A stretch of 64,000 nt of DNA from Scyliorhinus canicula (lineage: Eukaryota), in NCBI RefSeq assembly GCF_902713615.1, contig NC_052158.1, forward strand, positions 14,876,546 to 14,940,545, read 5' to 3'. Below are positions 9,141-64,000 of the stretch, in pieces; position 1 is the first letter of the stretch, and every line of letters begins with the position of its first letter. The notes below the pieces were generated by a model, which was not told the origin of the DNA, did no database searches, and saw nothing but the letters and a program-made list of their open reading frames with translations. The position numbers and the translations under genes are program-made.

Positions 9141-9146
9141 CTTCAC

Positions 9147-9210
9147 CTTTCGCCTGCTCCAGGCTCAGTCCGGCCGGCGGCTGTTGCTGCTGCTGTTGAG
9201 CCGCCGCCAT
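9147..9210 (-). CDS. C12orf57: C12orf57 (protein C10/GRCC10) coding exon 1: MAAAQQQQQQPPAGLSLEQAK, phase-1 end
   Basis: ATG at 9210-9208. The peptide resembles the human C10 N-terminus (..PAALSAEQAK). Donor AAAG|gtgaag, 64 nt, joins exon 2 in frame. Confidence 0.9.
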
Positions 9211-9289
9211 GTCACCGTCTTGGTGCCGGAGAGAAATCCAGCTCCAGGTCCCGGAGCAGCCCGGCCGCCTGGGCCGCAACTCGGAGCGA

Positions 9290-11335
9290 TAGAGGCCGGA
9301 GGAGCAGGCCCGGCAACAGCTCCACCCAGAGGCCGGAGGACCGCACCCGGGAACAGCTCCACCTAGAGGCTGGAGGAGCAGGCCCGGGAACAGCTCCACC
9401 CAGAGGCCGGAGGAGCAGGCCCGGGAACAGCTCCACCCAGAGGTCGGAGTACCGCGCCCGGGAACAGCGCCACCCAGAGGCCGGAGGCCCGCACCCGGGA
9501 ACAGCTCCACCCAGTGGCCGGAGGAGCAGGCCCGGGAACAGCTCCACCCAGAGGTCGGAGTACCGCGCCCGGGAACAGCGCCACCCAGAGGCCGGAGGCC
9601 CGCACCCGGGAACAGCTCCACCCAGAGGCCCGTACCTGGGAACAGCACCACCTAGATGCCGGAGGACCGCACCCGGGAACAGCTCCTCCCGCAGTCGGAG
9701 GACCAATCCCGCAACGAGGAGCCGAGCCGCCCGCAGGTCGGAGGACCGATCCCGCAGCCGCGAACAGCGCCACCATCAGGTCGGAGAACCGGCCCGTCAG
9801 CAGGGAATGGCGCCACCCGCAGGTCGGAGAACCGATCCGTTATCAGGGAACAGCGCCACCCGCAGTCAGAGGACCGATCCCGCAGCTGGGAACAGCGCCT
9901 CCCGCAGGTCGGAGGGACGATCCCGCAGCGGGGAGCAGCGCCGCCCACAGGTCGGAGGACCGATCCTGCAGTGGGGAACAGCGCCACCCGCAGTCGGAGG
10001 ACCGATACCGCAGCCGGAACAGCGCCACCCGCAGTCGCGGGACCGATACCGCAGCCACGAACAGCGCCACCCGCAGTCGGAGGAGCGAGCCCGCAGCCGG
10101 GAACAGCGCCACTCGCAGTCGGAGGACCGATCCCGTAGCCGGAACAGCGCCACCCGCGGGTCGGAGGACCGATCCGTCAGCGGGGAACAACGCCACCCGC
10201 GGGTCGGAGGAGCGATCCTGCAGCGGGGAGCAGCGCCACCCGCAGTCGGAGGACCGATCCCGTAGCCGGAACAGCGCCACCCGCGGGTCGGAGGACCGAT
10301 CCGTCAGAGGGGAACAGCGCCACCCGCAGTCGGAGGATCGATTCTGCAGCGGGGAACAGCGCCACCCGCAGTCGGAGGACCGATTCTGCAGCCGGGAACA
10401 GCGGCACCCGCAGTCGGAGGACCGATCCCGTAGCGGGAACAGCGCCGACCGCGAGTCGGAGGACCGATCTGTCAGCGGGGAACAGCGCCACCCGCGGGTC
10501 AGAGGAGCGATCCTGCAGCGGGGAGCAGCGCCGCCCACAGGTCGGTGGACCGATCCCGCAGCGGGGAACAGCGCCACCCGCACAGCGCCTCCCGCAGGTC
10601 GGAGGACCGCACCCGGGAACAGCACCACCCGGAGGACCACACCCGGGAACAGCACCACCCAGAGGCCGGCGGACCGCACCCAGGAACAGCTCCACCCAGA
10701 GGCTGGAGGAGCGGGCCCACACCCGGGAGCAGCTCCACCCAGAGGTCGGAGGCCCGCAACCGGGAACAACACCACCCAGAGGCCCGCACCCGGGAACAGC
10801 TCCACCCGGAGGCCGGCACCCGGGAGCAGCGCCACCCGCAGTCGGAGGACCGATCCCGCAGCCGGAACAGCGCCGCCCGCAGGTCGGAGGACCGAGCCCA
10901 CAGCCGCAAACAGCGCCGCCCGCAGGTCGGATGACCGATCCTGCAACAAGGAGCAGAGCCGCCCGCAGGTCGGAGGACTGATCCCGCATCCGCGAACAGC
11001 GCCACCATCAGGTCGGAGAACCGACCCGTCAGCAGGGAACCGCGCAGGTCGGAGGACCGAACCCGCAACCGCGAACAGCGCCACCATCAGGTCGGAGGGA
11101 CGATCCCGCAGCCGGGAACAGCGCCGCCCGCAGGTCGGGGGACCGATCCCGCAGCCGGGAACAGCGCCACCATCAGGTCGGAGGGACGATCCCGCAGCCG
11201 GGAACAGCGCCGCCCGCAGGTCGGTGGACCGATCCCGCAGCCTGGAACAGCGCCACCATCAGGTCGGAGGGACGATCCCGCAGCCGGGAACAGCGCCACC
11301 CGCAGGTCGGAGGGACGATCCCGTAGCGGGGAACG
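9290..11335. repeat. CpG-rich compound minisatellite (37-bp and 41-43-bp units, core gggaacagcgccacccgcagtcggaggacc) just upstream of the C12orf57 ATG
   Basis: Unit spacing 37 bp at 9351/9388 and 42 bp at 10021/10063/10105. Confidence 0.95.
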
Positions 11336-18028: not shown

Positions 18029-18110
18029 CTCTCTGATATCTTTTTCCACCAAGTGAGGGACAATTCCTGGATCCAAAGCATTCTCCTCCTCTAAATCCTC
18101 CAACGGTTTC
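18029..18110 (-). CDS. Ig receptor exon 9, acidic cytoplasmic tail: (K)KPLEDLEEENALDPGIVPHLVEKDIRE
   Basis: Acceptor gtttgttaag, donor GAG|gtaggt, 82 nt. Phase-2 start matches the TM exon. Acidic like ALCAM and RAGE tails. Confidence 0.8.
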
Positions 18111-18607: not shown

Positions 18608-19875
18608 CAGTGCTGCACTATTGTACGATCAGTACTAAGGGAGAGCTGCACTGTCAGAGGGTCAGTACTGAGGGAGTGCTGCACTGTCAGAGGGTCAGTA
18701 CTGAGGGAGTGCTGCACTGTCAGAGGGTCAGTGCTGAGGGAGCGCTGCACTGTCAGAGGGTCAGTACTGTGGGAGTGCTGCACTGTCAGAGGGTCAGTAC
18801 TGAGGGAGTGCTGCACTGTCAGAGGGTCAGTTCTGTGGGAGTGCTGCACTGTCAGAGGGTCAGTACTGAGGGAGTGCTGCACTGTCAGAGGGTCAGTACT
18901 GAGGGAGCGCTGCACTGTCAGAGGGTCAGTACTGAGGGAGTGCTGCACTGTCAGAGGGTCAGTACTGAGGGAGTGCTGCACTATTGTACGATCAGTACTA
19001 AGGGAGAGCTGCACTGTCAGAGAGTCAGTACTGAGGGAGTGCTGCACTGTCAGACGGTCAGTACTGAGGGAGTGCTGCACTATTGTACGATCAGTACTAA
19101 GGGAGAGCTGCACTGTCAGAGGGTCAGTACTGAGGGAGTGCTGCACTGTCAGAGGGTCAGTACTGAGGGAGTGCTGCACTGTCAGAGGGTCAGTACTGTG
19201 GGAGTGCTGCACTGTCAGAGGATCAGTACCGAGGGAGTGCTGCACTGTCAGAGGGTCAGTACTGAGGGAGTGCTGCACTGTCAGAGGGTCAGTACTGTGG
19301 GAGTGCTGCACTGTCAGAGGGTCAGTACTGAGGAGTGCTGCACTGTCAGAGGGTCAGTACTGGTGGGAGTGCTGCACTGTCAGAGGGTTCAGTACTGGAG
19401 GGAGTGCTGCACTGTCAGAGGGTCAGTACTGAGGGAGTGCTGCACTGTCAGAGGGTCAGTACTGAGGGAGTGCTGCACTGTCAGAGGGTCAGTACTGAGG
19501 GAGTTCTGCACTGTCAGAGAGTCAGTACTGAGGGAGCACCGCACTGTCAGAGGGTCAGTACTGAGGGAGTGCTGCACTGTCAGAGGGTCAGTACTGAGGG
19601 AGTGCTGCACTGTCAGAGAGTCAGTACTGAGGGAGAGCTGCACTGTCAGAGGGTCAGTACTGAGGGAGTGCTGCACTGTCAGAGGGTCAGTACTGAGGGA
19701 ATGCTGAACTGTCAGAGTCAGTACTGAGGGAGTGCTGCACTGTCAGAGGGTCAGTACTGAGGGAGTGCTGCACTGTTAGCGGGTCAGCACTGAGGGAGTG
19801 CTGCACTGTCAGAGGGTCAGTACTGAGGGAGTGCTGCACTGTCAGAGGGTCAGTACTGAGGGAGAGCTGCACTGT
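18608..19875 (+). repeat. 33-bp minisatellite (cagtactgagggagtgctgcactgtcagagggt)n
   Basis: About 38 units. The 11-aa periodic ORFs are a by-product. Confidence 0.95.
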
Positions 19876-21871: not shown

Positions 21872-22001
21872 TTCTCTGTCTTCTTCCTGTGGTAGCACAT
21901 GTAGTATGCTATGGTAGTGGAGAAAGCCACCAACATTAACGTCACTATGATTCCAATAACCATGCCAGCCCTCTTCAGCGACTTGGACTTTCCATGATGA
22001 T
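21872..22001 (-). CDS. Ig receptor exon 8, transmembrane: (D)HHGKSKSLKRAGMVIGIIVTLMLVAFSTTIAYYMCYHRKKTE
   Basis: Translated by hand. About 24-aa hydrophobic segment followed by a basic stop-transfer sequence RKK. Acceptor ttgcttgcag, donor AA|gtgagt, 130 nt, phase 1-2. Confidence 0.92.
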
Positions 22002-24313
22002 CTGCAAGCAATAATATCGAGCTGTAACAGTACACCCATGGAGGAGGTCAGCGGGAAATAAACATACAGATAAAATTCTTTCCCTTGCCGTTAAATTACT
22101 CCATGGCCTCCCTTCCCGTACCAGCCTCCCCGAACAGGCGGCGGAATGTGGCGACTAGGGGCTTTTCACAGTAACTTCACTTGAAGCCTACTCGTGATAA
22201 TAAACGATTTTCATTTCATTTCTTCACGGGCCCTTTGACCTGCTTCAGTCTTAAACCCCGGAGGAACAGGATGAACTTGCCAGCCCCTTCCGGCTTGCAG
22301 GTAGGTTCACCCTCTCTGTTAAAATGGCAGAGGGGGGGAATGTCACGTGACTGCCTTAAACACTCGTCTGCCAATCTCACTCCGGTTGTAGAATTAACAC
22401 GTGGGTAAGATTGAATCAGACTGTGGGCATCCTCCTGACGGGTTTCATACCTGTGGAGTGGCTTTCTTCGGCGAACACTGAAATGAAAGTTAAGAAAGCA
22501 AAATGAGAAAATGTTGAGGCAAAATCGTTCCCCCCCCCCCCCCCCCCCCCCCCCCCCGCTCCCTCCCCGCATTTAGGAGCTGATTTACTTTAGTTCTTGA
22601 GTCGTTGGTGACACTCGGGCAGGGAATGCCACAGTGACCAGGGAATGTTTAACCCACTCTTCTTACCCCACTCTTACCAAAGAGTGCCAGCTGTGGCCTA
22701 GTGGATAGTACTGCCAGCTCTGAACCGACTCCAGTACATAACCTAGGCTGATACCCCACCGCTGAGAGGGAGTGCTGTCCCCACATGCTCTCTCGGGCAG
22801 GTGTAAGTGGTCCCATAGCACTATCTCGAGGGAGAGCAGGCGGGGTGGGGATGTTCGACCCTAAGCCCTGCCCAATATCTATCCCTTCACCAACCCCACT
22901 GAAGCACCATCTGTTCCATAATTAATTGCGGCTCGTGGGATCCTGCTGTGCACAAATTGGCTGTTGTTCAGCTTACACGGTAAAAGTGACTCCGCTTAAA
23001 AAAACAATCCGGCTGTAAAGTGCTTTGGCACTGCCTGGCATTGTGAAAGGGGTGTATAGAAATGCAAGCTCTGCAATTTTTTCCCCCCATTTAAGGTGCA
23101 ATTTAGCGTGGCCAATCCACCGACTCTGCACATCTTTCACGCAGACATGGGAAAAATGTGCAAACTCCACACGGACAGTGATGTGGGGCCGGGATCGAAC
23201 CCGGGTCCTTGCCGCCAAGAGACAGCAGTGCTAACCATTGCGCCACCATGCCACCCGTTCTGTTTTATTTATCCAGTGACTCTTTGTCTCCAGTTTGTCT
23301 GTCTCCAGAAGGAGCTGTCTATCGCAGGTACCTTTACCTCACTCAGTTAGTCGTTGCCTCCCATGCGAATGCCAGCAGGCTATTCGACTAGGTGGGCATC
23401 ATGGTCCAGCCCGACCTTGTCCTCAACCCCCACCCAATCTCACACATGCCAACATTCCAGCCAGAGTCACTTGCACAGGGAATCCTGGTCCTGAATCCCA
23501 CCACCGTTCCCAAATCCCTCCTCTCCTACAATGCAGAGGTGTTCTACTGCCTTATTCGTTCCTCAGCTCACGTTGCGGAAGTCTTACAGCATCTGACAGT
23601 AGGTTTCCACACTTGGGCCACAAGGGGTCTCAGTAAAGATGGTGTTGAATACCTTCAACCAAGCCATCAATAATGCCACTAGGATGTTGAACTAGGGTGC
23701 TCTTTCAGAGGGTCGGTGCAAATTCAATGGGCTGAATGGCCTCTTTCTGCACTGTAGAAATTCTATGATTCTATGACAGCAGGCAGAGGATGTCATGATC
23801 ACTCTATCTTTCAGCACTGTGTCCCCGCCTGGGCCCTGAAACACACTTGCAGCATGGGAATCACTAAATTTACACGCGTTCTGAGCGGAACTGATTTGAT
23901 TGCAACACCAACGGATTATTCCTCACTCAATGGCGGATCAAGCATCCAGCAGTTCTTCAATGAACATTAGATATGGGGAGGCATGGCGGCACATTGGTCA
24001 GCCCGGTTTGATTCTGACCTTGGAGTTGACTGTCTCAGTGGAGTTTGCACTTTCTCCCCGTGCCTGCGTGGGTTTCCTCCGGGTGCTCCGGTTTGCTCCC
24101 ACAGTCCAAAGATGTGCAGGTTAGGTGGATTGGCCATGCAAAATTGCCTCTTAGTATCCAACGGTTAGGTGGAGTTACGGGGCTAGAACGGGTGGGGTGG
24201 GGTGGGGTGGGGGGAGTGGTGGGCCTAGTTAGAGTGCACTTTCGAAGGGGCGGTGCAGACTCAATGGGCCGAATGGCCTTCTTCTGCACTGTAGGGATTC
24301 TATGATATCTTAC

Positions 24314-24349
24314 CTCCTGGTCCATTTAACTCATTGTTATCTTCTCTTG
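24314..24349 (-). CDS. Ig receptor exon 7, 36-nt stalk: (A)REDNNELNGPG
   Basis: Strong acceptor tttctttctgtattcctccag and donor GAG|gtaaga, symmetric phase 1-1, located between the last Ig exon and the TM exon. Confidence 0.8.
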
Positions 24350-26393: not shown

Positions 26394-26526
26394 CTCTCAC
26401 TTGAATGGCCACGCTAGCTGATTTGGCGTTGAAGTCGAAGTCAAAGACAGTGCACTGGTACTCTCCTTCGTCCTGCTTCGTCACCGCCTGCAGCGTGTAC
26501 TGGGCCGAGTCGCTGAACTGTATTCC
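26394..26526 (-). CDS. Ig receptor exon 6: GIQFSDSAQYTLQAVTKQDEGEYQCTVFDFDFNAKSASVAIQVR
   Basis: Canonical Ig motif L..V...D.G.Y.C. Acceptor tctcag, donor G|gtaggc, 133 nt, phase 0-1. Confidence 0.93.
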
Positions 26527-28925: not shown

Positions 28926-29053
28926 GTCTTTTTCCCACATATATTTTTCTGGTGGAAGGTTGGTGTCAGCAGTACAATTCAGGGTGATGGTGTCACCTTC
29001 TCGTATCACGTCGTTGAGTGGGCCCACTTCTATTGTAACGCCTTCTATTGGAT
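28926..29053 (-). CDS. Ig receptor exon 5: (Y)PIEGVTIEVGPLNDVIREGDTITLNCTADTNLPPEKYMWEKD
   Basis: Acceptor ttcccgtgtacag, donor GAC|gtaagt, 128 nt, phase 1-0. Resembles ALCAM YPTEQVTIQV..IKEGDNITLKC and ends W.KD like RAGE. Confidence 0.93.
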
Positions 29054-36275: not shown

Positions 36276-36452
36276 AATACACGTCAATCGTGATGGTATC
36301 AGATCTCTGCGCCTCATTTTGGGAAGGATAAAACACTTCACAAAAGAACCTGGCATTCATGTCATTCTTTCTTGCTGTATAATATAATGTTGACTCGATT
36401 GTGAGAAGCCTGGTATTTTGGTCCTTCGTGATATGATTTTGGATGTGCGTGT
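36276..36452 (-). CDS. Ig receptor exon 4: (D)THIQNHITKDQNTRLLTIESTLYYTARKNDMNARFFCEVFYPSQNEAQRSDTITIDVY
   Basis: Not in the ORF track, translated by hand. Acceptor atttctag, donor T|gtaagt, 177 nt, phase 1-1. D..A.F.C F-strand motif like MCAM/ALCAM D2. Confidence 0.92.
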
Positions 36453-38388: not shown

Positions 38389-41014
38389 CTACACTATGCC
38401 CTTATCATCCATATGCTTATCCAATAAACTTTTAAATGCCCCCAATGTTGGCGAGTTCACTACTGTTGCAGGTAGGGCATTCCACGGCCTCACCACTCTT
38501 TGCGTAAAAAACCCACCTCTGACCTCTGTCCTATATCTATTACCCCTCAATTTAAGGCTATGTCCCCTCGTGCTAGCCACCTCCATCCGCGGGAGAAGGC
38601 TCTCGCTGTCCACCCTATCTAACCCTCTGATCATTTTGTATGCCTCTATTAAGTCACCTCTTAACCTTCTTCTCTCTAACGAAAACAACCTCAAGTCCAT
38701 CAGCCTTTCCTCATAAGATTTTCCCTCCATACCAGGCAACATCCTGGTAAATCTCCTCTGCACCCGTTCCAAAGCTTCCACGTCCTTCCTATAATGAGGC
38801 GACCAGAACTGTACGCAATACTCCAAATGCGGCCGTACTAGAGTTTTGTACAACTGCAACATGACCTCATGGCTCCGGAACTCAATCCCTCTACCAATAA
38901 AGGCCAACACACCATAGGCCTTCTTCACAACCCTATCAACCTGGGTGGCAACTTTCAGGGATCTAAGTACATGGACACCGAGATCCCTCTGCTCATCCAC
39001 ACTACCAAGAATTTTACCATTAGCCAAATATTCCGCATTTCTGTTATTCTTTCCAAAGTGAATCACCTCACACTTCTCCACATTAAACTCCATTTGCCAC
39101 CTCTCAGCCCAGCTCTGCAGCTTATCTATGTCCCTCTGTAACCTGCAACATCCTTCCGCACTGTCTACAACTCCACCGACTTTAGTGTCATCAGCAAATT
39201 TACTCACCCATCCTTCCGCGCCTTCCTTTCTCAAAGAACTCGATAAGGTTTGTGAGGCATGACCTACCCTTCACAAAACCATGCTGACTGTCCCTAATCA
39301 TATTATTCCTATCTAGGTGATTATAAATCGTATCTTTTATAATCCTCTCCAAGACTTTACCCACCACAGACGTTAGGCTCACCGGCCTATAGTTACCGGG
39401 GTTATCTCTACTCCCCTTCTTGAACAAAGGGACCACATTTGCTATCCTCCAGTCCTCTGGCACTATTCCTGTAGCCAACGATGACCTAAAAATCAAAGCC
39501 AAAGGCTCAGCAATCTCTTCCCTGGCTTCCCAGAGAATCCTAGGATAAATCCCATCCGGCCCCGGGGACTTATCTATTTTCACCTTGTCCAGAATTGCCA
39601 ACACTTCTTCCCTACGCACCTCAATGCCATCTATTCTAATAGCCTGGGTCTCAGCATTCTCCTCTAAAATATTATCTTTTTCTTGAGTGAATACTGACGA
39701 AAAGTATTCATTTAGTATCTCGCTTATCTCCTCAGCCTCCACACACAACTTCCCACCACTGTCCTTGACTGGCCCTACTCTTACCCTAGTCATTCTTTTA
39801 TTCCTGACATACCTATAGAAAGCTTTTGGGTTTTCCTTGATCCTACCTGCCAAAGACTTCTCATGTCCCCTCCTTGCTCGTCTCAGCTCTCTCTTTAGAT
39901 CCTTCCTCGCTTCCTTGTAACTATCAAGCGCCCCAACTGAAACTTCACGCCTCATCTTCACATAGGCCTCCTTCTTCCTCTTAACAAGAGATTCCACTTC
40001 TTTGGTAAACCACGGTTCCCTCGCTCGACCCCTTCCTCCCTGCCTGACTGGTACGTACTTATCAAGAACATGCAATAGCTGTTCCTTGAACAAGCTCCAC
40101 ATATCCAGTGTGCCCAACCCTTGCAGCCTACTTCTCCAACCAACACATCCTAAGTCATGTCTAATGGCATCATAATTGCCCTTCCCCCAGCTATAACTCT
40201 TGCCCTGCGGGGTATACTTATCCCTTTCCATCACTAACGTAAAGGTCACCGAATTGTGGTCACTGTTTCCAAAGTGCTCACCTACCTCCAGATCTAACAC
40301 CTGGCCTGGTTCATTACCCAAAACCAAATCCAATGTGGCCTCGCCTCTTGTTGGCCTGTCAACATATTGTGTCAGGAAACCCTCCTGCACACATTGTACA
40401 AAGAACGACCCATCTAATGTACTCGAACTATATCTTTTCCAGTCAATATTTGGAAAGTTAAAGTCTCCCATAACAACTACCCTGTTACTTTCGCTCTTTT
40501 CCAGAATCATCTTCGCCATCCTTTCCTCTACATCCCTAGAACTATTAGGTGGCCTATAGAAAACTCCCAACAGGGTGACCTCTCCTTTCCTGTTTCTAAC
40601 CTCAGCCCATACTACCTCGGAAGAAGAGTCCCCATCTAGCATCCTTTCCGCCACCGTAATACTGTCCTTGACTAGCAGCGCCACACCTCCCCCTCTTTTG
40701 CCCCCTTCTCTGAGCTTACTAAAACACCTAAACCCCGGAACCTGCAACAACCATTCCTGTCCCTGCTCTATCCATGTCTCTGAAATGGCCACAACATCGA
40801 AGTCCCAGGTACCAACCCATGCTGCCAGTTCCCCTACCTTATTTCGTATACTCCTGGCATTGAAGTAGACACACTTCAAACCACCTACCTGTACACTGGC
40901 ACCCTCCTGCGAAGTCAAATCTGTGCTCCTGACCGCTATACTCTCAATCTCCCGTACCCCAAAACTACAATCCAGGTTCCCATGCCCCTGCTGAATTAGT
41001 TTAAACCCCCCCAA
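38389..41014 (-). pseudogene. CR1 ORF2 (AP endonuclease plus reverse transcriptase), split by a deletion near 39228
   Basis: NARS, ISETW, YRPP, MGDFN, LDLV, SDH (APE); SPGPDG, NYRPVSLTS, QHGF, SCLTNL, then a jump to SKFADDTK and VRPHLEYCVQFWSP. The DFSKAFD and GVPQGS motifs are absent. Confidence 0.92.
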
Positions 41015-41634
41015 AGAGCACTAACAAATCTCCCCCCCAGGATATTGGTGCCCCTCAGGTTCAGGTGTAGACCATCCTGTCTATAGAGGTCCCACCTTCC
41101 CCAGAAAGAGCCCCAGTTATCCAGAAATCTGAATCCCTCCCGCCTGCACCATCCCTGTAGCCACGTGTTTAATTGCTCTCTCTCCCTATTCCTCATCTCA
41201 CTATCACGTGGCACGGGCAACAACCCAGAGATAACAACTCTGTTTGTTCTCGCTCTGAGCTTCCATCCTAGCTCCCTAAAGGCCTGCCTGACATCCTTGT
41301 CCCCTTTCCTACCTATGTCGTTAGTGCCAATGTGGACTACGACTTGGGGCTGCTCCCCCTCCCCCTTAAGGACCCGGAAAACACGATCCGAGACATCACG
41401 TACCCTTGCACCTGGGAGGCAACATACCAAACGTGAGTCTCTCTCGCTCCCACAAAATCTCCTATCTGTGCCCCTGACTATTGAGTCCCCAATTACTAAT
41501 GTTCTACTCCTTTCCCCCCTTCCCTTCTGAGCAACAGGGACAGACTCCGTGCCAGAGGCCCGTACCCCATGGCTTACCCCTGGTAAGTCGTCCCCCCCAC
41601 AAGTATCCAAAACGGTATACTTGTTACTCAGGGA
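40996..41634 (-). pseudogene. CR1 ORF1 C-terminal SGNH/GDSL esterase domain
   Basis: Motifs VIGDSIVRG, CLPGARV, HIGTNDIG, DGLHLN. Confidence 0.9.
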
Positions 41635-52867: not shown

Positions 52868-52955
52868 CATTGCCATTCGGTTGTAGCACTTTCCCATTCT
52901 TGTACCAGGTAACATTGGGGATGGGATAGCTGTCCATCACGACACACTTTCCAAT
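52868..52955 (-). CDS. Ig receptor exon 3: IGKCVVMDSYPIPNVTWYKNGKVLQPNGN
   Basis: Acceptor tcttctctgcag, donor G|gtgaga, 88 nt, phase 0-1. Aligns with ALCAM LGDCISEDSYPDGNITWYRNGKVLHP (B-strand Cys, C-strand Trp). Confidence 0.93.
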
Positions 52956-54457
52956 CTGCAGAGAAGAGATGCAAAGTTGAAACCAAGTCCAGGAGAAGGT
53001 AATAAGGACCCTGTTTGGGCTCACGTGGGGCTCATTAAGGTGAAGGCTGTTGGCTGAGGGGATTGGGGAACATTTCAGCCGGTGGGACTGTAAAATCAGC
53101 ACCGTCGGATCGATTTCCTGATTAATCGACATTTATTGCCCATCCCTAATTGCCCCTTCAGGAGGTGGTGGTGAGGCATCTTCTTGAATCCGCCGCAGTC
53201 CCTGTGGTGTCGTGTCACCTATAGTGCCATTAGGGAGGGAGTTCCAGGGTTTTGACCCAGCGACAGTGAAGGAACGGCCAATATATTTCCAAGTAAGGAT
53301 GGTGAGTGACTTGGAAGGGGGACTAGCAGAAGGCGTTATTTACAAGTATCTACTGCCCTTATCCTTCCAGGTGATTAAGGTCACAGGGTTGGAAGGCACT
53401 GAACAGCTTTGTTGAGTTCCTGCAGGGCATCTTGTGTGGGTGCACCGGGCAGAGGGAGCAGATGGTTCATTTCAAAGAAAAGTACCATTGGGTGCGTAAC
53501 ACAACGGCTGGTCAATAATCCATCACTGCCTATTTTTCCACCTATCCAGGTTAAACTGTATCCCCCCCAACTCCCACCACCTCTGTAGGCATCCTGGGTC
53601 TGGCAATAGGAGGGAGCAGGTGCCCAGGATAGTCCATCAGTGACCTCTGTGTGGGTCTGTCGTGGCGGGATTCGAACCCAAGCTTCCCCCCCCAGGGGTC
53701 AACAGACGATACCAGCAGGCCACTGCCTCCTGGTGAGGTCAGCCCATTGGCATTCAGTGGGCAAGTGGTGGTCAAATACTCCTTGAGCAGTTGGTGCCTC
53801 TGGTCCATGGTAACATGATTGGACAACCCTTTCAGAGCTATCAATCTTAATCGATTGGTCTACAATAGATATAGAGGCGATAAGGAGAACCCCACTGATA
53901 AAGAACATCGGTCCAAGGTTTTCTATTCCACCCAAGCCACACTTGCCCTATATCAAATCTCAAAGCACGTATATTACACCCCAAAATATTCTTTTCTCTG
54001 AGAGAAGTTCCCCTAATTTGCCTTTGAATGAAGCACCGCAAACTTATTCTGCTGTCTCCCCGGGCAATCTGTTCCACCTCCCTGATGTTTTTGCCCTCTT
54101 CCAAAGAGATGCTCCCTCCCATCCTGTGACATGGCAGCATAATGGGCAGGTTGGGGGCAGCACGGTGGAGCAGTGGGTTAGCCCTGCTGCCTCACGGCGC
54201 CGAGGTCCCAGGTTCGATCCCGGCTCTGGGTCACTGTCTGTGTGGAGTTTGCACATTCTCCCCGTGTTTGCGTGGGTTTCGCCCCCACAACCCAAAGATG
54301 GGCAGGGTAGGTGGATTGGCCACACTAAATTGCCCCTTAATTGGAAAAAATGAATTGGATAGTCTAAATTTAAAAAAAAATAATGGGCAGGTTGGAGCTG
54401 GGGCGGGATTTCATCATCACAAATAGAATCTTAAACCAGCGGTTCTGCAAACATTAC

Positions 54458-54522
54458 CTCAGAACGTGTGTCAACAGTAATTGTCATGTAGTTTGCTGTC
54501 AACTCAGGTTTGGCTGGCCGCT
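54458..54522 (-). CDS. Ig receptor exon 2: (E)RPAKPELTANYMTITVDTRSE, start of first Ig domain
   Basis: Acceptor ttcattttcag, donor GAG|gtaatg, 65 nt, phase 1-0. P.KPE motif as in ALCAM KQPSKPEI and RAGE IPGKPEI. Confidence 0.88.
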
Positions 54523-54564
54523 CTGAAAATGAACATAGTTATGTTAGCTCTTGGCAGCACATAG

Positions 54565-54813
54565 TGTTAACATGTACGAGATGCTGTGGTATGAAGAGGC
54601 AAGAGTTCAGCTCCTTTTTCACCAACACACCTTTAATGGTTCAAACTCACTCTGCACAGGACTCTACAGATCATCACAAGCTCCAGAGTCCACCTGAAGC
54701 CCCTTTACATATCAGTGTCAATCATTGAACACTTAACATAAATGAGACAATCTTTGAACACTTAACATAAATGAGACAACTAATTGCAATGTCTCTTAAC
54801 CCATTACTTAACA
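54565..54813 (-). mobile_element. Short solo LTR
   Basis: tgttaa...ttaaca inverted termini, near-perfect 5-bp TSD catag/cacag. Confidence 0.6.
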
Positions 54814-56409
54814 CACAGTCTGTCACAGTTACCCATCATGCTTCCAATGTGTTATAGATAACAAAAAACTGATAGTAGATGCTATATCTGTCTGTCTATC
54901 TCATCTATCAATCTTTTATTCTATCAAACAACTGATTGATCAATCCATGAATTGATCATTGTATTAGCTGCTCTGTTTATTTGTCTGTCTATCTGCCCTT
55001 CTATCTATCTTATCTTTCAATTTATCACTCTATTAATCAAATTATTCATCTATCCATTAATTGGGGGCAGCACGGTGGCGCAGTGGTTAGCACTGAAGTC
55101 TCACGGCGCCGAGGTCCCAAGTTTGATCCTGACTCTGGGTCACTGTCCGTGTGGAATTTGCATATTCTTCCCATGTGTGTGTGTGGGTTTTACCCCCAAA
55201 ACCCAAAAGATGTGCAGGGTAGGTGGATTGGCCACGCTACATTGCCCCTTAATTGGAACAAATGAATTGGGTACTCTAAATTTCAAAAAAGATCTATCCA
55301 TCAATTGATCATTACACCAAATGGTTTGTTTATTCGTCTGTCCATCCGCCTACCATTCCGTCCATCTATCTATCTGCTGTAAGTTGCTTAGCCTAGCTTT
55401 GAAATGATTACTGAGATGTCGGTGTGTTCAACTGGCTCATTTTATACAACTGAACTATGTACAGCTGTCCATGATCAGGGGGCAGAATTCTAGGTTTTCC
55501 CCACTGGGTTTGCAAGTGAGGAGATGGAGGGGGGTGGGGGTGGGGAGATTGAACATTTCACAAGTAGATTTCTCGCTGGGTTGCCACCCACCTGAACCTC
55601 TCTGAAATCCTAGGCCCAGGTTGTCCCACCCATCCTTGCTGCAGTGGCCAAGTATTGACCACTTAACAACTGTGTCCTGCCCGGTCCCAGTTTTCAATCA
55701 TTGATCTCCCCGTGGAACCCATTGAGTCCGGGTTCCCCAGGTAGGGGGAGACGGAAGTCAAATACCTGGGGCTCGTTAGGAGCAACGGATAAAAGCAGGC
55801 CCAACTCAGGGCCTCGTGTAACAAGTCCTCCCAGCTAGGATTGCTACTGAGAGTGAGGGGCAGCATTACACAGACGATTGTAAATATGTAAATCAATCCT
55901 TCTTTGCTTACTGCAGCTTTCCTCTGAGTTATTAGAATATTCTGATCCCCAAACTCTAGGTTCCTTTTTAATAATCTAATAGTAAACATAATTGTTGTCA
56001 CAAGTAGGCTTACATTAACACTGCAATGAAGTTACTGTGAAAATCCCCCAGTTGCCATATTCTGGCACCTATTCGAGTACACAGAGGGAGAATTCAGAAT
56101 GTGCAAATTACCTAACAGCACGTCTTTCGGGACTTGTGGGAGGAAACCCACGCAGACATGGGGAGAACGTGCAGACTCTGCACAGACAATGGCCCAAGCC
56201 GGGAATCGAAACCAGGTACCTGGCGCTGTGAAGCAACAGTGCTAACTACTGTGCAACTGTACCACCATGGGATAATAAAGTTTAGAGGAAAAATGACAAT
56301 ATTTGTATGAATAAAACAGAGAAAGAGAGAGGGTGGGATTAACCGTTCCGCCAGCCGTGTTTTCCTGAGCGCCGCGTTCCTCGCCGGCAGCAGGATTCTC
56401 TGTTCCCGC

Positions 56410-56650
56410 TACAGAGATACGGTACAGAGATGTGCTACAGAGATATGGTACAGATACGGTACAGAGATGTGCCACAGAGATATGGTACAGATACGGCACA
56501 GAGGTACGGTACAGATACGACAGAGAGATGTGCTACTGAGATACGGTACAGATACGGTACAGAGATGTGCTACAGAGATATGGTACAGATATGTCACAGA
56601 GATACAGTACAGATACGGCACAGATATGGAACAGAGATTTGGTACAGCGG
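56410..56650. repeat. Low-complexity (acagagatacggt/acagagatgtgct) repeat
   Basis: Directly visible 11-13-bp units. Confidence 0.85.
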
Positions 56651-56762
56651 CACAGGTCACAGGTGACCATGAAGGGTAGGATCCTTGTAACATCCCAATA
56701 TGCTCACTGCTGCCCGTTAAGGAGGGAGTCCCGTTGTTCAGTGACATGGCTAACACTTAATT

Positions 56763-57410
56763 GACCTCCCAAGTGAATATCCCTCCTTTTTCGGGACAAT
56801 CCTCCAAAGTGACTATCCCTCCTTTCCCAGGATCCCTCCAAAGTGACAATCCATCCTTTCCCGGGATCCCTCCAAAGTGACAATCCATCCTTTCCCGGGA
56901 TCCCTCCAAAGTGACTATCCCTCCTTTCCCAGGATCCCTCCAAAGTGACTATCCATCCTTACCCGGGATCCCTCCAAAGTGACTATCCATCCTTTCCCGG
57001 GATCCCTCCAAAGTGACAATCCATCCTTTCCCAGGATCCCTCCAAAGTGGCTTTCCATCCTTTCCCGTGATCCCTCCAAAGTGACTATCCATCCTTTCCC
57101 AGGATCCCTCCAAAGTGACTATTTATCCTTTCCCAGGATCCCTCCAAAGTGACAATCCATCCTTTCCCGGGATCCCACCATAGTGACTATTCCTCCTTTC
57201 CCAGGATCCCTCCAAAGTGACTATCCATCCTTTCCCGGGATCCCTCCAAAGTGGCTTTCCATCCTTTCCCGGGATCCCACCATAGTGACTATCCATCCTT
57301 TCCCAGGATCCCTCCAAAGTGACTATCCATCCTTTCCCAGGATCCCTCCATAGTGACTATCCATCCTTACCCGGGATCCCTCCAAAGTGACAATTCTTCC
57401 TTTCCCGGGG
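56763..57410. repeat. 34-bp minisatellite (ggatccctccaaagtgactatccatcctttcccg)n
   Basis: Spacing 34 bp (56831/56865), about 19 units. Confidence 0.95.
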
Positions 57411-58191
57411 TAACCAAGGGACAGATAGTCTCGCCAGCTCTGCCCATAATCCCAGGAATGAAAAACTCGAGGTGTTTGGATGAGGGGAAGGCGGAGGAGA
57501 GTCAGAGCGAGACAGTGAAACCCTGGGCATGCAGGTCACATTCCTGCTGTCAGCAACTCTCCCAGCCAGGGCTGACTCAAAAGGAGCAGTGGAAACTTTC
57601 CAGACTGTTTGTGAAGTGTTTCTCTCTGCGGTGCATGTGGGCTGCTGGTGGGAGATATCAGCGCGCAATCTGTGCCTTGGCGTGAGCTTTCCTTTCTTCC
57701 AATTCCTCCTGCAGGCTGATGGCAGCAGATTGTGCCTGACTCACGGTCAGTCATAACAGGCCTGTCTGCCTCTGGGTGACAACAGGCGCCATCCCAGACC
57801 CGCTTGGCTGTGGGAGGGTGAGGTGCGGCAATTGTGTTTGTTTTACACCGACTGATTCCCATCTCACTGCCATCTACTGATCTGGTTATCTGCGAATAAC
57901 TTGCACAGAAAGGATCCTCCTCCGCCTGCAACCCAACAAGGGCTGAATTCAGGGGGTTGGGCACTCACTTCACAGCCACGGCTTCAGGTTTCACCCAGGC
58001 AAGCCAGCACAGGTTGGTTCTTTCCTGTAGTGCAAGAGAAGCAGCAGCCGATTCGCACACTGGAGGCTCCTGTGTAGAGCAGCATTTCATTAACTGGACA
58101 ATGGGATTATGACCGAGACAGGCAAAATTCCCCCGCTCTCCCGGGAATCACACAGTGTCCCCGCCCCCCACACAGGCACACCCCTTATTGC

Positions 58192-60680
58192 CCCTCTGAC
58201 AGAGCAGCACTCCCACAGTACTGACCCTCTGACAGTGCAGCTCTCCCTCAGTACTGACCCACTGACATTGCAGCACTCCCTCAGTACTGACCCTCTGACA
58301 GTGCAGCACTCCCTCAGTACTGACCCTCTGACAGTGCAGCACTCCCTCAGTACTGACCCTCTGACATTGCAGCACTCCCTCAGTACTGACCCTCTGACAG
58401 TGCAGCACTCCCTCAGTACTGACCCTCTGACAGTGCAGCTCTCCCTCAGTACTGACCCTCTGACAGTGCAGCACTCCCTCAGTACTGACCCTCTGACAGT
58501 GCAGCACTCCCTCAGTACTGACCCTCTGACATTGCAGCACTCCCTCAGTACTGACCCTCTGACAGTGCAGCTCTCCCTCAGTACTGACCCTCTGACAGTG
58601 CAGCTCTCCCTCAGTACTGACCCTCTGACAGTGCAGCTCTCCCTCAGTACTGACCCTCTGACAGTGCAGCACTCCCTCAGTACTGACCCTCTGACAGTGC
58701 AGCACTCCCTCAGTGCTGACCCTCTGACAGTGCAGCACTCCCTCAGTACTGACCCTCTGACAGTGCAGCACTCCCTCAGTACTGACCCTCTGACAGTGCA
58801 GCACTCCCTCAGTGCTGACCCTCTGACAGTGCAGCACTCCCTCAGTGCTGACCCTCTGACAGTGCAGCTCTCCCTCAGTACTGACCCTCTGACAGTGCAG
58901 CACTCCCTCTGTACTGACCCTCTGACAGTGCAACACTCCCTCAGTACTGACCCTCTGACTCTGCAGCTCTCCCTCAGTACTGACCCTCTGACTGTGCAGC
59001 GCTCCCTCAGTTCTGACCCTCTGACAGTGCAGCACTCCCTCAGTACTGACCCTCTGACAGTGCAGCACTCCCTTAGTACTGACCCTCTAACAGTCCAGCA
59101 CTCCCCCAGTACTGACCCTCTGACAGTGCAGCACTCCCTCAGTGCTGACCCTCTGACAGTGCAGCACTTACTGATCCCCTGACAGTGCAGCACTCCCCCA
59201 GCCCTGACACTGAAAGTCCAGCAGTCCTTCAGCATTGAACCCTTGACAGTGTGGCACTCCCTGTACTGCCCCTCCGACAGTGCAGCTCTCCCTCAGTACT
59301 GATCCTCTGACAGTGCGGCACTGCCTATGTACTGACCCTCTGACAGTGCAGCACTCCCTCAGTACTGACCCTCTGACAGTGCAGCATTCCCTTAGTACTG
59401 ACTTTCTGACGGTGCAGAACTCCCTCAGTACTGACCCTCTGACAGTGCAGCACTCCCCCAGTACTGACCCTCTGACAGTGCAGCACTCCCTCAGTGCTGA
59501 CCCTCTGACAGTGCAGCACTCCCTCAGTACTGATCCCCTGACAGTGCAGCACTCCCCCAGCCCTGACACTCTGAAAGTCCAGCAGTCCTTCAGCATTGAA
59601 CCCCTGACAGTGTGGCACTCCCTGTACTGCCCCTCCGACAGTGCAGCTCTCCCTCAGTACTGACCCTCTGACAGTGAAGCACTCCCTCAGTGCTTACCCT
59701 CTGACAGTGCAGCACTCCCTCAGTACTGATCCCCTGACAGTACAGCACTCCCCCAGCCCTGACACTCTGAAAGTCCAGCAGTCCTTCAGCATTGAACCCC
59801 TGACAGTGTGGCACTCCCTGTACTGCCCCTCCGACAGTGCAGCTCTCCCTCAGTACTGACCCTCTGAGAGTGCAGCTCTCCCTCAGTACTGACCCTCTGA
59901 CGGTGCAGGACTCCCTCAGTACTGACCCTCTGACGGTGCAGGACTCCCTCAGTACTGACCCTCTGACGGTGCAGGACTCCCTCAGTACTGACCCTCTGAC
60001 AGTGCAACACTCCCTCAGTACTGACCCTCTGACTCTGCAGCTCTCCCTCAGTACTGACCCTCTGACTGTGCAGCGCTCCCTCAGTTCTGACCCTCTGACA
60101 GTGCAGCACTCCCTCAGTACTGACCCTCTGACAGTGCAACACTCCGTCAGTACTGACCCTCTGACAGTGCAGCGCTCCCTCAGTACTGACCCTCTGACAG
60201 TGCCGCACTCCCTCAGTACTGACCCTCTGACAGTGCCACACTCCCTCAGTACTGACCTTCTGACAGTGCGGCACTCCCTCAGTACTGTCCCTCTGACAGT
60301 GCAGCACTCCCTCAGTACTGACCCTCTGACAGCGCAGCGCTCCCTCAGTACTGACCCTCTGACAGTGCCGCACTCCCTCAGTACTGACCCTCTGACAGTG
60401 CCACACTCCCTCAGTACTGACCTTCTGACAGTGCCGCACTCCCTCAGTACTGACCCTCTGACAGTGCAGCATTCCCTCAGTACTGACCCTCTGACATTGC
60501 AGCATTCCCTCAGTACTGACCCATCTGACATTGCAGCATTCCCTCAGTACTGACCCATCTGACATTGCAGCACTCCCTCAGTACTGACCCTCTGACAGTG
60601 CAGCACTCCCTCAGTACTGACCCTCTGACATTGCAGTGCTCCCTCAGTACTGACCCTCTGACTGTGCAGTCCGCCCTCAC
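58192..60680 (-). repeat. Same 33-bp minisatellite in the opposite orientation, with a higher-order insert repeated three times
   Basis: About 70 units. Insert cagccctgacactctgaaagtccagcagtccttcagcattgaac at about 59199, 59558 and 59754. Confidence 0.95.
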
Positions 60681-60899
60681 TACTGCACGTTATTCCCCTC
60701 CAACGACACATTAGTTAAAAGGCTCTTTGCCATTTGGAATTCACACCTGTCAGGCAAATGATCTGAACCCAAATCCTGACAGCAATTGACAAGTTCGAGC
60801 ATAAAGCAATCTTGCTCTGAAAGGACTTTAAAAGAAACAATCCTGGGAGAGAGAGGTAGGGAACTCCGTACTCTAACCATGTCTGAAATCCTCACCCTC

Positions 60900-61410
60900 G
60901 TGATTAAAACCTAACTGTAACCAAATACGAAATCTTATCCCAATTTTGACCCTATCTTGAATCGTAGCCGTAACAATGACCATTAACTGAGTCCTAACCA
61001 CAGCCACAATGTAACCCTATTCCTAATTTCATCCCGTAACATGACCCAAACTCCAATCACAATTGAACACAGGCTCACACCCTATCGCGAACCCTAACCC
61101 GAAACACGAACCCTTACCCTATCCTAAACTGAACCATAACGCAAGCCTTACCAGTATCTCTAACCCTCTCCCTTACCCTCAGACTAAACAAACCTCTCAC
61201 CATAGCCAAGACCTGAACCCCATTCCCAACTCTAATCTTGTCCCCCAATTGGCCCCGAATCTTATTCCTAGCTCCAGCTATAACCCTAACCCTAATGCCA
61301 ACCTTAGCCTTAACCGTAACGTAGACATATCTCTATCCCTAACTCTAATTCCAGCCATGAACCTGAGTGATTCCTAACCCTCGCCCTGCTCCCAACCCCT
61401 ATCCCTGTAC
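60900..61410. repeat. Degenerate (CCCTAA)n-like hexamer repeat in intron 1 of the Ig gene
   Basis: Recurrent ccctaa/cctaac/ccttaa/ccgtaa hexamers. Confidence 0.65.
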
Positions 61411-61495
61411 ATGACCCTGAATCCTCGGAGCTTAGGAACTCCAGGATAAATAAGATCAACTTTGCTGTGAGGAAGGATGAAGTGGGAGTACTTAC

Positions 61496-61565
61496 CATGC
61501 GGGGAGACAACGTGAGCATAAGCTGAGAGAAGGAGTGCACAGGTCAGAGCAGAAGCTATGGCCAT
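61496..61565 (-). CDS. ALCAM/MCAM/BCAM/AGER-family Ig receptor exon 1, signal peptide MAIASALTCALLLSAYAHVVSPH
   Basis: Good Kozak context (agcATGG), hydrophobic leader, 70 nt ending in phase 1 at a strong donor G|gtaagt, the typical IgSF leader exon. Confidence 0.8.
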
Positions 61566-62219: not shown

Positions 62220-64000
62220 ATATTTTATTAAGGCATTTATAATTTTAACATTTTAAACAAAGAGATCCACCAAACAAACAAAAACATAAACATCTTCCCC
62301 CCAAACCTATACCCTGACTACCATGGTCCATGTAACTACTCCATCTCACAGTTCTCCATTAGTTTTCCTAACCATATTCATCACTCCCATGCCTCCCCCT
62401 CCAACCCCCGCCCAACCACCCCACTCCCATCTCCCCTGCTGATGGTCAATTTTCCTTGAAGAAGTCGCTGAACGGCTGCCACCTCCGAGCGGACCCCTGT
62501 AATGAACCCCTTAAGGCGAATTTGATTTTCTCCAGCCTAAGAAACCCGGCCATGTCGCTGACCCAAACCCCGACTTCGGAGGCTCCGAGTCTCTCCATCC
62601 CAGCAGAATCCGTCTCCGGGCCACCGGGGAGGCAAAGGCCTAAACGTCGGCCTCTCTTCCCCCCTGGGGTCCCGGATCTTCCGACACTCCAAAGCTCCCT
62701 CCCACCACCTTAAACGACATCTCCCTCAGTCTCCTCTCCTGCCCCTTTGCCTGGATTGCAAAAACTTAGCTCTGGCCCATATTCAATTTATAACCTGAGA
62801 ACTGGCCAAATTCCTCCAGTGTCTCCATAATTCCTACAATCCTCCTCAACAGGTCTGTAGTGTAAAGGAGCAAATCGCCCGCATAGGGCGAGACTCTGTG
62901 CTCCACCCCACCCCTCTTTATCAGCGGCAAACGTTCAATGTTCGCAGTGCCATTGCCAAAGGCTCTATGGCCAGGGCAAACTGTAGTGGGGAGAGTGGAC
63001 ACCCCTATCTCGTCCCCCAATACCGGCTGAAATATTCCAATCACATCCGATTCATCCTTACATTTGCCAACGGTGCCTGATATAGCAACCGACCCAATCC
63101 ACAAATCCCTGCCCAAACCCAAACCTTCCCAGGACCTCCCATAGATATTTCCACTCCACCCGATCAAAGGCCTTTTCTGCATCCATGGCCGCCACCACCT
63201 CAACCACACGTCCCGCCGCAGCATCATTATTACGTTAAGGAGCCGTCTAATGTTGGACGGCAGGTAACAAATCCCATCGGGTCCTCCCCTATTACCCCCG
63301 GAACACAGTCCTCTATCCCCGTGGTCAAGATCTTTGCCAGCAATTTTGCATCCACATTTAGCAGGGAGATTGGCCTATACGACCCACAGCTTTCCGGATC
63401 TTTATCCCGTTTCAAAACAAGGGAAATCGATGCCTGCGATAACGTCGGGGGAAGCACTCCCAATTCTTTTGACTCATTAAAAGCCTTGACCAAAAGCGGC
63501 CCCAACAGCCAGGAAACTACTTATAGAACTCCACCGGGTATCCGTCTGGCCCCCGGGCTTTGCCCGATTGCATCGCCCCCACCCCCTCTATAACCTCCCC
63601 GAGTCCAATTGGGACTCCAAGATCCTCCACCACCTCCTCATCTATCCTTGGGAACTCCAGCACCTCCCCCAAAATCACTTCATCCCCTCCTCCCCGGCTG
63701 GGGATTCCGATTTATACAATTTACTGTAAAACTCCCAAAACACATCATTCACCCCTGCTGGGTCCAGAAACCACCTTCCCTCCTGTATCCCTCACTTTCC
63801 CAATCTCTCTTGCCACCTCCTGTTTCCTCAGCTGATGGGCCAGCATCCTGCTAGCTTTTCCCCCAAATTCATACACCTCCGTTACCCTCCTCAGCTGTCC
63901 CTCCGCCTTAACCACCGACTTCAATAGTCCAATTGGACAGAGGAGGATTAGAAGAAGTGGTACACCCAATCTTTCTACAGAAGAACAGCATGGGCTTGAT
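62220..64000 (-). mobile_element. Degraded L1/Tx1-clade LINE ORF2 (RT region) and 3' end, running off the window
   Basis: Frameshifted pieces SQASISLVLKRDKDPESCGSYRPISLLNVDAKLLAKIL, YAGDLLLY, FGQFSGYKLN, EFGGKASRMLAHQLRKQ. Confidence 0.88.

What the first reader, a model, noticed from the sequence alone, without database searches (positions are those of the whole stretch)
54523..61495. The N-terminal V domain appears to be absent
Seen: the leader exon (phase 1) joins the 65-nt P.KPE exon in frame (..VSPH-E-RPAKPEL). I found no Ig-V-like exons in the 7-kb intron, which is mostly minisatellites and SINEs. Established: the V domain is the main ligand-binding domain in ALCAM (CD6, homophilic binding) and RAGE (AGE, S100, HMGB1). 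Inference: a genomically fixed V-less two-domain receptor would have different ligands or act as a modulator. Caveat: a collapsed assembly in the 58.2-60.7 kb array could hide exons.
Basis: partly seen in the sequence, partly recalled or inferred. Interest (0 to 1): 0.75.

Follow-up and report, generated by a model that had tools for sequence, protein, structure and literature searches.

The report
Catshark RAGE-like receptor lacking V domain
In the small-spotted catshark assembly, a cell-surface receptor gene of the RAGE/ALCAM family has no exons for its outermost, ligand-binding V domain, although every other shark and ray checked has them; no sequencing reads could be examined here, so the loss is likely but not proven.

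Summary
On the minus strand, a leader exon (61565-61496) ends in phase 1. It joins in frame to a 65-nt exon (54522-54458) that begins the second-type Ig domain, the equivalent of RAGE C1 or ALCAM D2. The resulting 314-aa protein is identical to RefSeq XP_038671907.1 ("CD166 antigen-like", Scyliorhinus canicula).

Orthologues in Mustelus, 13 further sharks and rays, and the coelacanth "AGER" are mostly 407-446 aa. They carry a roughly 105-aa V-set domain between the same leader and the same P-x-K-P-E motif.

A profile built from those V domains finds nothing in the 6973-nt intron, in 104 kb around the gene, or anywhere in the 4.2-Gb assembly. The other exons are found easily, and only at this locus. 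Both S. torazame gene models also lack the V domain.

The remaining protein evolves no faster than in Mustelus, which keeps its V domain.

Most likely the V exons were lost in the Scyliorhinus lineage. That leaves a hard-wired equivalent of the human "N-truncated RAGE" isoform.

Not tested: read support for the exon junction, expression, long-read coverage of the 2.5-kb minisatellite, and function.

Interest is moderate.

The parts
61496..61565 (-). Leader (signal-peptide) exon, coding part of 70 nt, encoding MAIASALTCALLLSAYAHVVSPH plus the first base of the next codon. It ends in phase 1. The donor is CATG|gtaagt.
   Evidence: It is 75% identical over 20 residues to the leader of the Mustelus orthologue. 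It forms the N-terminus of XP_038671907.1.
54523..61495 (-). Intron 1, 6973 nt. This is where orthologues would carry the two V-domain exons. No V-like coding sequence is present.
   Evidence: tblastn. Unfiltered profile search, best 5.1 and 13.3 bits, against 53-109 bits for true V halves. No N in the window.
58192..60685 (+). Minisatellite of 33 nt x 76 copies inside intron 1. A second array of the same unit lies inverted at 18629-19849.
   Evidence: Its translation (..RVSTEGVLHCQ..) gives the weak 10-13-bit V-profile scores. The array at 19 kb gives similar scores.
56765..57409 (.). Minisatellite of 34 nt x 19 copies in intron 1. A smaller 37/98-nt array lies at 56415-56647.
54458..54522 (-). 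Exon 2, 65 nt, encoding (E)RPAKPELTANYMTITVDTRSE. It starts the first Ig domain, the equivalent of RAGE C1 / ALCAM D2.
   Evidence: It aligns to ALCAM residues from 127 and to RAGE from about 97.
52868..52955 (-). Exon 3, 88 nt, encoding IGKCVVMDSYPIPNVTWYKNGKVLQPNGN. It carries the B-strand Cys and the Trp of the first Ig domain.
   Evidence: Pfam C2-set_2 positions 19-41, E 6e-6.
36276..36452 (-). Exon 4, 177 nt, the second half of the first Ig domain (..RFFCEVFYPSQ..).
   Evidence: Pfam C2-set_2 positions 47-87. Used as the query that recovered the RefSeq protein.
28926..29053 (-). Exon 5, 128 nt, the first half of the membrane-proximal Ig domain.
26394..26526 (-). Exon 6, 133 nt, the second half of the membrane-proximal Ig domain (..DEGEYQCTVFDFDFN..).
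24314..24349 (-). Exon 7, 36 nt, stalk (AREDNNELNGPG).
22451..22477 (-). Exon 8, 27 nt, stalk (VFAEESHST).
21872..22001 (-). Exon 9, 130 nt, the transmembrane helix and the start of the tail.
   Evidence: AlphaFold2 helix at residues 251-283.
18029..18110 (-). Exon 10, 82 nt, the acidic cytoplasmic tail (KPLEDLEEENALDPG..). A last short exon encoding EP-stop was not mapped.

Best explanation
This is the single catshark orthologue of an elasmobranch V-C1-C2 receptor of the RAGE/ALCAM/MCAM/BCAM family. The two exons that encode the N-terminal V domain have been lost from the germline in the Scyliorhinus lineage.

Ig-superfamily exons are phase 1 at both ends, so the leader exon splices straight to the 65-nt exon that opens the next domain, and the frame is kept. 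The product is a type I membrane protein: signal peptide, C1-type (C2-set_2) Ig domain, membrane-proximal Ig domain, short stalk, one transmembrane helix and a short acidic tail. This is the architecture of the human splice isoform 'N-truncated RAGE' (residues 124-404), but here it is written into the genome.

Shown:
- the exon structure and the in-frame join
- identity to the RefSeq model
- orthology
- presence of the V domain in relatives
- absence of any V exon from the assembly
- two well-folded Ig domains
- no excess substitution compared with Mustelus

Inferred:
- The deletion is real and shared by the genus.
- The mRNA is made.
- The protein has lost the ancestral V-mediated binding. 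It therefore acts, if at all, through C1/C2, for example by self-association, by binding C1-type ligands, or as a ligand-blind partner or decoy.
For: - Gene model. Ten mapped exons plus one unmapped terminal exon sum to 945 nt, which equals XP_038671907.1.
- Orthologues. They run leader - about 105-aa V-set domain - (K)xPxKPE. Examples are Mustelus asterias XP_078061611.1 (420 aa) and proteins of Heptranchias, Pristiophorus, Stegostoma, Hemiscyllium, Pristis, Amblyraja, Narcine, Mobula, Hypanus and Rhinoraja, plus the coelacanth 'AGER'.
- Pfam. V-set scores 40 bits in Mustelus and stays below the cut-off in the catshark.
- Whole-genome search. The Mustelus V domain gives a best E of 2. A 13-sequence V profile gives a best E of 0.003, with all hits at unrelated Ig genes.
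- Positive control. Mustelus residues 129-420 find five exons, only at this locus, with E from 1e-5 to 7e-14.
- Local unfiltered profile search over 104 kb. The best scores are 9.3 and 13.3 bits, against 53-109 bits for true V halves left out of the profile.
- Tree. Scyliorhinus is sister to Mustelus. Its branch is 0.24, against 0.31 for Mustelus. Changes at near-invariant sites number 9 of 98, against 9 of 94 in Mustelus.
- S. torazame. Its proteins are 93.8% identical to the catshark protein. Both have an intact frame from ERPAKPEL onward and no V domain.
- Fold. The AlphaFold2 model has two Ig domains with block-mean pLDDT mostly 83-96. Its best structural matches are the human RAGE VC1C2 crystal structures.
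Against: - No read-level evidence. The junction, expression and coverage of the 2.5-kb minisatellite are therefore unverified.
- Only one S. canicula assembly was examined, so a deletion polymorphism or a collapse between two arrays is not excluded.
- The S. torazame evidence is indirect. One model is a TRIM chimera. The other is an N-truncated 208-aa model whose start (MPRFFCEV) fits a 1-nt frameshift in exon 4, which would point to decay.
- No transcript-derived fragments of the N-terminal part exist in the protein collection.
- The differences between the two catsharks concentrate in the newly exposed C1 domain (12 of 18, p = 0.012). This could reflect relaxed constraint as well as adaptation.
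Confidence: 0.6

Rival explanations
1. Decaying gene. The loss of the V exons is real, but it disabled the receptor. What remains is an open-framed relic drifting towards a pseudogene, and it has no V-independent function.
For: The S. torazame RefSeq model has only 208 aa and starts MPRFFCEV. The other S. torazame model reads ..DMNARFFCEV.. at that place. This fits a one-base insertion in exon 4 followed by a restart at an out-of-frame ATG; that is an inference from the protein sequences only. Twelve of the 18 differences between the two catsharks fall in C1. No transcript-derived fragments were found in the protein collection.
Against: The frame is intact over about 290 codons in S. canicula and in the older S. 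torazame assembly. All four Ig cysteines and the Trp are kept. The number of hits at near-invariant positions is no higher than in Mustelus, which keeps its V domain. The branch length is not inflated. The C2 domain shows 1 change in 87 residues between the two species. The supposed frameshift could be a homopolymer error in a long-read assembly.
Confidence: 0.22
2. Assembly or haplotype artefact. The V exons exist in S. canicula but are missing from this assembly. They could have been dropped by a collapse between two copies of the 33-nt array, or they could be present only on the other haplotype.
For: Intron 1 holds a 2.5-kb array of a dispersed 33-nt minisatellite. No read evidence could be obtained. 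Only the primary assembly was searched.
Against: The window has no N. No V exon lies on any of the 646 contigs, unplaced ones included. The RefSeq pipeline produced one isoform, and it lacks the V domain. Neither model from two independent S. torazame assemblies has a V domain. From general knowledge rather than a test here, a 2.5-kb array is short compared with the long reads used for assemblies of this kind.
Confidence: 0.13
3. Wrong first exon. The 61.5-kb exon is not the true or only leader, and transcripts start elsewhere, with V exons outside the region examined.
For: The older S. torazame annotation joins exons of the upstream TRIM gene to the 65-nt exon.
Against: The catshark leader is orthologous to the Mustelus leader, with 15 of 20 residues identical. 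It has a strong donor in the right phase. No V exon was found in the 40 kb up to the TRIM gene or anywhere in the genome. The TRIM fusion has no signal peptide and looks like an annotation merge.
Confidence: 0.05

Closest known systems
Human N-truncated RAGE (N-RAGE, residues 124-404), a splice isoform of AGER
   Same: The same domain content: C1-type Ig, C2 Ig, transmembrane helix and acidic tail, with no V domain (PMC8268101). The catshark protein begins at the equivalent of RAGE residue about 120. The best fold matches are RAGE VC1C2 crystal structures.
   Different: In humans it is a minor isoform made alongside full-length RAGE. In the catshark assembly it is the only form the gene can encode. 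[quoted passage not shown]
Mustelus asterias XP_078061611.1 and other elasmobranch 'CD166 antigen-like' or 'AGER' proteins (407-446 aa)
   Same: One-to-one orthologues. They share the leader, the P-x-K-P-E start of domain 2, the C2 domain, the stalk, the transmembrane helix and the tail. Identity over the shared part is 55-69%.
   Different: They carry a V-set domain of about 105 aa, encoded by two exons, between the leader and domain 2. The catshark does not.
ALCAM (CD166), PDB 5a2f
   Same: The best sequence match among solved structures. The catshark protein aligns to ALCAM D2-D3 with E 7e-42, and the D2 domain superposes at 1.6 A with 37% identity.
   Different: ALCAM has five Ig domains (V-V-C2-C2-C2). 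By established knowledge it binds CD6 and itself through its N-terminal V domain. The shark family has three domains, and the catshark two.
RefSeq XP_038671907.1 'CD166 antigen-like [Scyliorhinus canicula]'
   Different: It is an automatic model with a generic name. No paper in the library searched describes it or the missing domain.

Membership tests
RAGE/ALCAM/MCAM/BCAM family of Ig-superfamily adhesion receptors | N-terminal V-set domain that carries the main ligand-binding site | tested here: not met
   No V-set match above the Pfam cut-off in the catshark protein (19.7 bits against a cut-off of 26, and that match lies in the C2 domain). Mustelus scores 40.4 bits. No V exon in the locus or the genome.
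RAGE/ALCAM/MCAM/BCAM family of Ig-superfamily adhesion receptors | Second domain of the C2-set_2 type (PF08205) that opens with a P-x-K-P-E/x motif | tested here: met
   PF08205 at residues 29-120, E 8e-17. It aligns with ALCAM D2, RAGE C1 and BCAM D2.
RAGE/ALCAM/MCAM/BCAM family of Ig-superfamily adhesion receptors | Membrane-proximal Ig domain or domains, a single transmembrane helix and a short cytoplasmic tail | tested here: met
   Ig_2/Ig_3 at residues 141-219. AlphaFold2 helix at 251-283 and a tail of about 30 residues.
RAGE/ALCAM/MCAM/BCAM family of Ig-superfamily adhesion receptors | Significant sequence and fold similarity to solved family members | tested here: met
   ALCAM E 7e-42, RAGE E 4e-20, BCAM E 5e-10. 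Foldseek top hits are RAGE VC1C2, E about 1e-17.
RAGE/ALCAM/MCAM/BCAM family of Ig-superfamily adhesion receptors | Shared exon-intron boundaries, with Ig domains split over phase-1 exons | tested here: inconclusive
   The catshark domains are split into exons of 65+88+177 nt and 128+133 nt, with phase-1 outer boundaries. Sessa et al. report boundaries conserved among the four human genes (PMC3903589). I did not align the human gene structures. My recollection that AGER has 65- and 88-nt exons is from memory only.
AGER (RAGE) orthologue | Three-domain V-C1-C2 ectodomain | tested here: not met
   Met by the orthologues in other elasmobranchs and in the coelacanth. Not met by the catshark protein, which is C1-C2 only.
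AGER (RAGE) orthologue | Closest similarity to mammalian RAGE rather than to ALCAM, MCAM or BCAM | tested here: inconclusive
   By sequence, the shark proteins hit ALCAM better than RAGE (167 against 117 bits). The coelacanth protein hits RAGE better (141 against 122 bits). By fold, the catshark model hits RAGE first. No tree with the human paralogues was built, because my last protein search returned only the query.
AGER (RAGE) orthologue | Position in the MHC class III region | not tested
   The neighbours seen here are a TRIM gene upstream and a C12orf57/P_C10 gene downstream. These were not compared with the MHC.

The most novel reading that the evidence does not exclude
Catsharks of the genus Scyliorhinus carry, as their only copy, a V-less RAGE-type receptor that is expressed and kept by selection. 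This would be a natural knock-out of the ligand-binding V domain. It would show that the C1-C2-TM-tail module has a function of its own, such as C1-mediated ligand binding, self-association, or ligand-independent signalling or decoy activity. The faster change in C1 would then mark adaptation of the newly exposed domain.
Probability: 0.3. Interest if true: 0.6.

Novelty: new variant of a known kind. Interest (0 to 1): 0.4.

Why it matters
In RAGE and ALCAM the V domain is taken to be where nearly all ligand binding happens. What the V-less human RAGE isoform does is unresolved. A species in which the whole gene has been reduced to that form, with a close relative (Mustelus) that keeps the full form, offers a natural comparison for testing what C1-C2 can do alone.

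The finding also adds to the evidence that RAGE-architecture genes exist well outside mammals, contrary to a 2014 survey (PMC3903589). That point belongs to the family as a whole, not to this finding.

If the gene is simply decaying, it is an ordinary lineage-specific loss.

Tried and rejected
No junction, expression or coverage evidence could therefore be obtained. From then on I used no letters of 54226-54267 as a query, and I left 54200-54300 out of later scans.
- The two sequencing-run searches found only small-share holders guessed to be RNA. This is not evidence of expression.
- The look-up of encoding contigs found no record for the catshark protein and gave no DNA for Mustelus, S. torazame (both assemblies) or Chiloscyllium. 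Intron 1 could therefore not be compared between species.
- The search for homologous proteins with catshark residues 1-120, meant to catch transcript fragments that carry or lack the V domain, found nothing. The search with the coelacanth protein returned only the query, because my cut-off was too strict.
- Regular-expression scans for Ig hallmarks in the upstream 40 kb were too noisy to use.
- I considered whether the 33-nt minisatellite is a relic of the V-domain F strand, because RVSTEGVLHCQ resembles VEDEGLFKCQ. I rejected this. The same unit forms a second, inverted array at 18.6-19.85 kb that gives similar profile scores.
- Heterodontus isoform X2 (325 aa) looked like a V-skipping isoform. 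In fact it starts inside the V domain.
Full report
**What is in the sequence**

The gene lies on the minus strand.
- The leader reads ATGGCCATAGCT...CCGCATG followed by gtaagt. Its coding part is 61565-61496 and it ends after the first base of a codon.
- The next coding exon follows ttcattttcag at 54522 and runs 65 nt to 54458, with donor gtaatg.
- I mapped the remaining exons at 52955-52868 (88 nt), 36452-36276 (177), 29053-28926 (128), 26526-26394 (133), 24349-24314 (36), 22477-22451 (27), 22001-21872 (130, transmembrane) and 18110-18029 (82).
- With a last short exon that I did not map, these sum to 945 nt.

**The model is already public**

I searched the 58-residue translation of exon 4 against 1.84 billion representative proteins. 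This returned a 314-aa protein at 100% identity, with the exon at residues 76-133. It is RefSeq XP_038671907.1, "CD166 antigen-like [Scyliorhinus canicula]". The window is G000:C13:14876546-14940545.

**What the protein is**

- Pfam finds C2-set_2 at residues 29-120 and Ig_2/Ig_3 at 141-219. No V-set match passes the cut-off.
- Among solved structures, the best sequence match is ALCAM domains 2-3 (E 7e-42). RAGE C1-C2 follows at E 4e-20. The alignments begin at ALCAM residue 127 and at RAGE residue about 97.
- An AlphaFold2 model has two confident Ig domains and a helix at 251-283.
- The best Foldseek matches to that model are the human RAGE VC1C2 crystal structures, E about 1e-17.

The first domain of the catshark protein is therefore the equivalent of the second domain of its relatives.

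**The V domain is ancestral**

- The same search returned a 420-aa protein from Mustelus asterias (XP_078061611.1) and the coelacanth "AGER" (XP_006013436.1, 421 aa).
- A search with the Mustelus protein gave orthologues of mostly 407-446 aa with a V-set domain. They come from Heptranchias, Pristiophorus, Stegostoma, Hemiscyllium, Chiloscyllium, Pristis, Amblyraja, Narcine, Mobula, Rhinoraja and Hypanus; the Carcharodon model is 383 aa.
- In the alignment these run leader - about 105 residues of V domain - (K)xPxKPE. The catshark runs leader - E - RPAKPE.
- The Carcharodon model, which lacks the first half of the V domain, places the internal V intron after ..W-L-L. The V domain is therefore encoded by two exons of about 37 and 68 codons.
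- A maximum-likelihood tree of the shared part follows the species tree, with Scyliorhinus sister to Mustelus.

**No V exon in the assembly**

- tblastn of three V-bearing proteins against the window plus 40 kb upstream found every other exon. It found nothing for the V domain.
- The Mustelus V domain searched against the whole 4.2-Gb genome gave a best E of 2.
- A profile of 13 V domains gave a best E of 0.003, with all hits in unrelated Ig genes on other chromosomes or far away on C13.
- As a control, Mustelus residues 129-420 found five exons, only at this locus, with E from 1e-5 to 7e-14.
- An unfiltered hmmsearch of every open stretch of 8 or more codons in 104 kb gave at most 9.3 bits for the first V half and 13.3 bits for the second.
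- True V halves left out of the profile score 53-109 bits, the coelacanth included.
- The 10-13-bit hits come from the translation of a 33-nt minisatellite. The second, inverted array of the same unit at 18.6-19.85 kb scores similarly.

**The intron**

Intron 1 is 6973 nt and the window has no N. Arrays at 56415-56647, 56765-57409 and 58192-60685 make up about 48% of it. SINE-like sequence lies at about 55.0-56.4 kb.

**The sister species**

S. torazame has two gene models.
- The older one (GCB70815.1, 577 aa) is a chimera of a TRIM protein and ERPAKPELIGNYMTITVGTHSE.. onward, with no V domain. In S. canicula that TRIM gene lies 39-42 kb upstream on the same strand, so the fusion is an annotation merge.
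- The RefSeq model from the newer assembly has 208 aa and starts MPRFFCEV. The older model reads DMNARFFCEV at that place. An extra C in ..AATGCCAGG.. would shift the frame and give ATG-CCC-AGG-TTC. This is my inference from the proteins only. It may be a real lesion or a homopolymer error.
- The coding span there is 18.5 kb and is followed by a P_C10 gene, as in the window.

**Constraint**

- The two catshark proteins are 93.8% identical over the shared part.
- The Scyliorhinus lineage changed 9 of 98 positions that are near-invariant in the other species. Mustelus changed 9 of 94.
- Branch lengths are 0.24 for Scyliorhinus and 0.31 for Mustelus.
- Of the 18 differences between the catsharks, 12 lie in C1, 1 in C2 and 5 elsewhere (Fisher p = 0.012).

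**What could not be done**

- No DNA of other sharks could be fetched.
- No transcript fragments were found in the protein collection.

Junction usage, expression, array coverage and fixation therefore remain untested.

**Literature**

[quoted passage not shown] Sessa et al. 2014 reported RAGE only in mammals and placed it with ALCAM, MCAM and BCAM (PMC3903589). I found no paper on this gene in sharks.

**Verdict**

The most likely reading is a real loss of the two V exons in the Scyliorhinus lineage, leaving an in-frame C1-C2 receptor (0.6). The rivals are a decaying gene (0.22), an assembly or haplotype artefact (0.13) and a wrong first exon (0.05).

Noticed in passing
window 18629-19849 (-) and 58192-60653 (+): Two arrays of the same 33-nt minisatellite (CCCTCTGACAGTGCAGCACTCCCTCAGTACTGA) lie in opposite orientation 38 kb apart inside one gene. 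Inverted repeats like these could promote rearrangement.
   Followed up: partly
G000:C13, 39-42 kb beyond the window end (window-equivalent 100143-103826, minus strand; loci L004-L005): A TRIM-type gene (RING, B-box) lies upstream on the same strand, 95% identical to the N-terminal part of S. torazame GCB70815.1. That record is therefore a fusion of two genes.
   Followed up: partly
window 36276-36452 (exon 4), compared with S. torazame XP_072331570.1: The 208-aa S. torazame RefSeq protein starts MPRFFCEV where the older S. torazame model reads ..DMNARFFCEV... This fits a one-base insertion in exon 4 of the newer S. torazame assembly, which could be a real frameshift or a homopolymer error.
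   Followed up: no
protein residues 25-134 (exons 2-4; window 54522-36276): Twelve of the 18 amino-acid differences between S. canicula and S. torazame fall in the C1-type domain, and only one in the C2 domain (Fisher p = 0.012).
   Followed up: partly
window about 7178-7399 (-) and about 3972-4298 (-): Open frames that look like exons of a C12orf57/C10 (Pfam P_C10) gene lie downstream on the same strand. The same neighbour follows the gene in S. torazame.
   Followed up: partly
window 39203-41020 (-), 38392-39270 (-) and 62769-63999 (-): Long reverse-transcriptase-like open frames that look like LINE elements lie in intron 3 and just upstream of the leader exon.
   Followed up: no
window about 7600-11300: A stretch of very high G+C (up to 72%) with long low-complexity open frames in several frames lies between the receptor gene and the C12orf57-like gene.
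   Followed up: no
orthologue proteins P0012 (Carcharodon) and P0016 (Heterodontus isoform X2): The Carcharodon model lacks the first V half-domain, and the Heterodontus X2 model starts inside the V domain. Either the 5' ends of this gene are variable or they are poorly annotated in several sharks.
   Followed up: no
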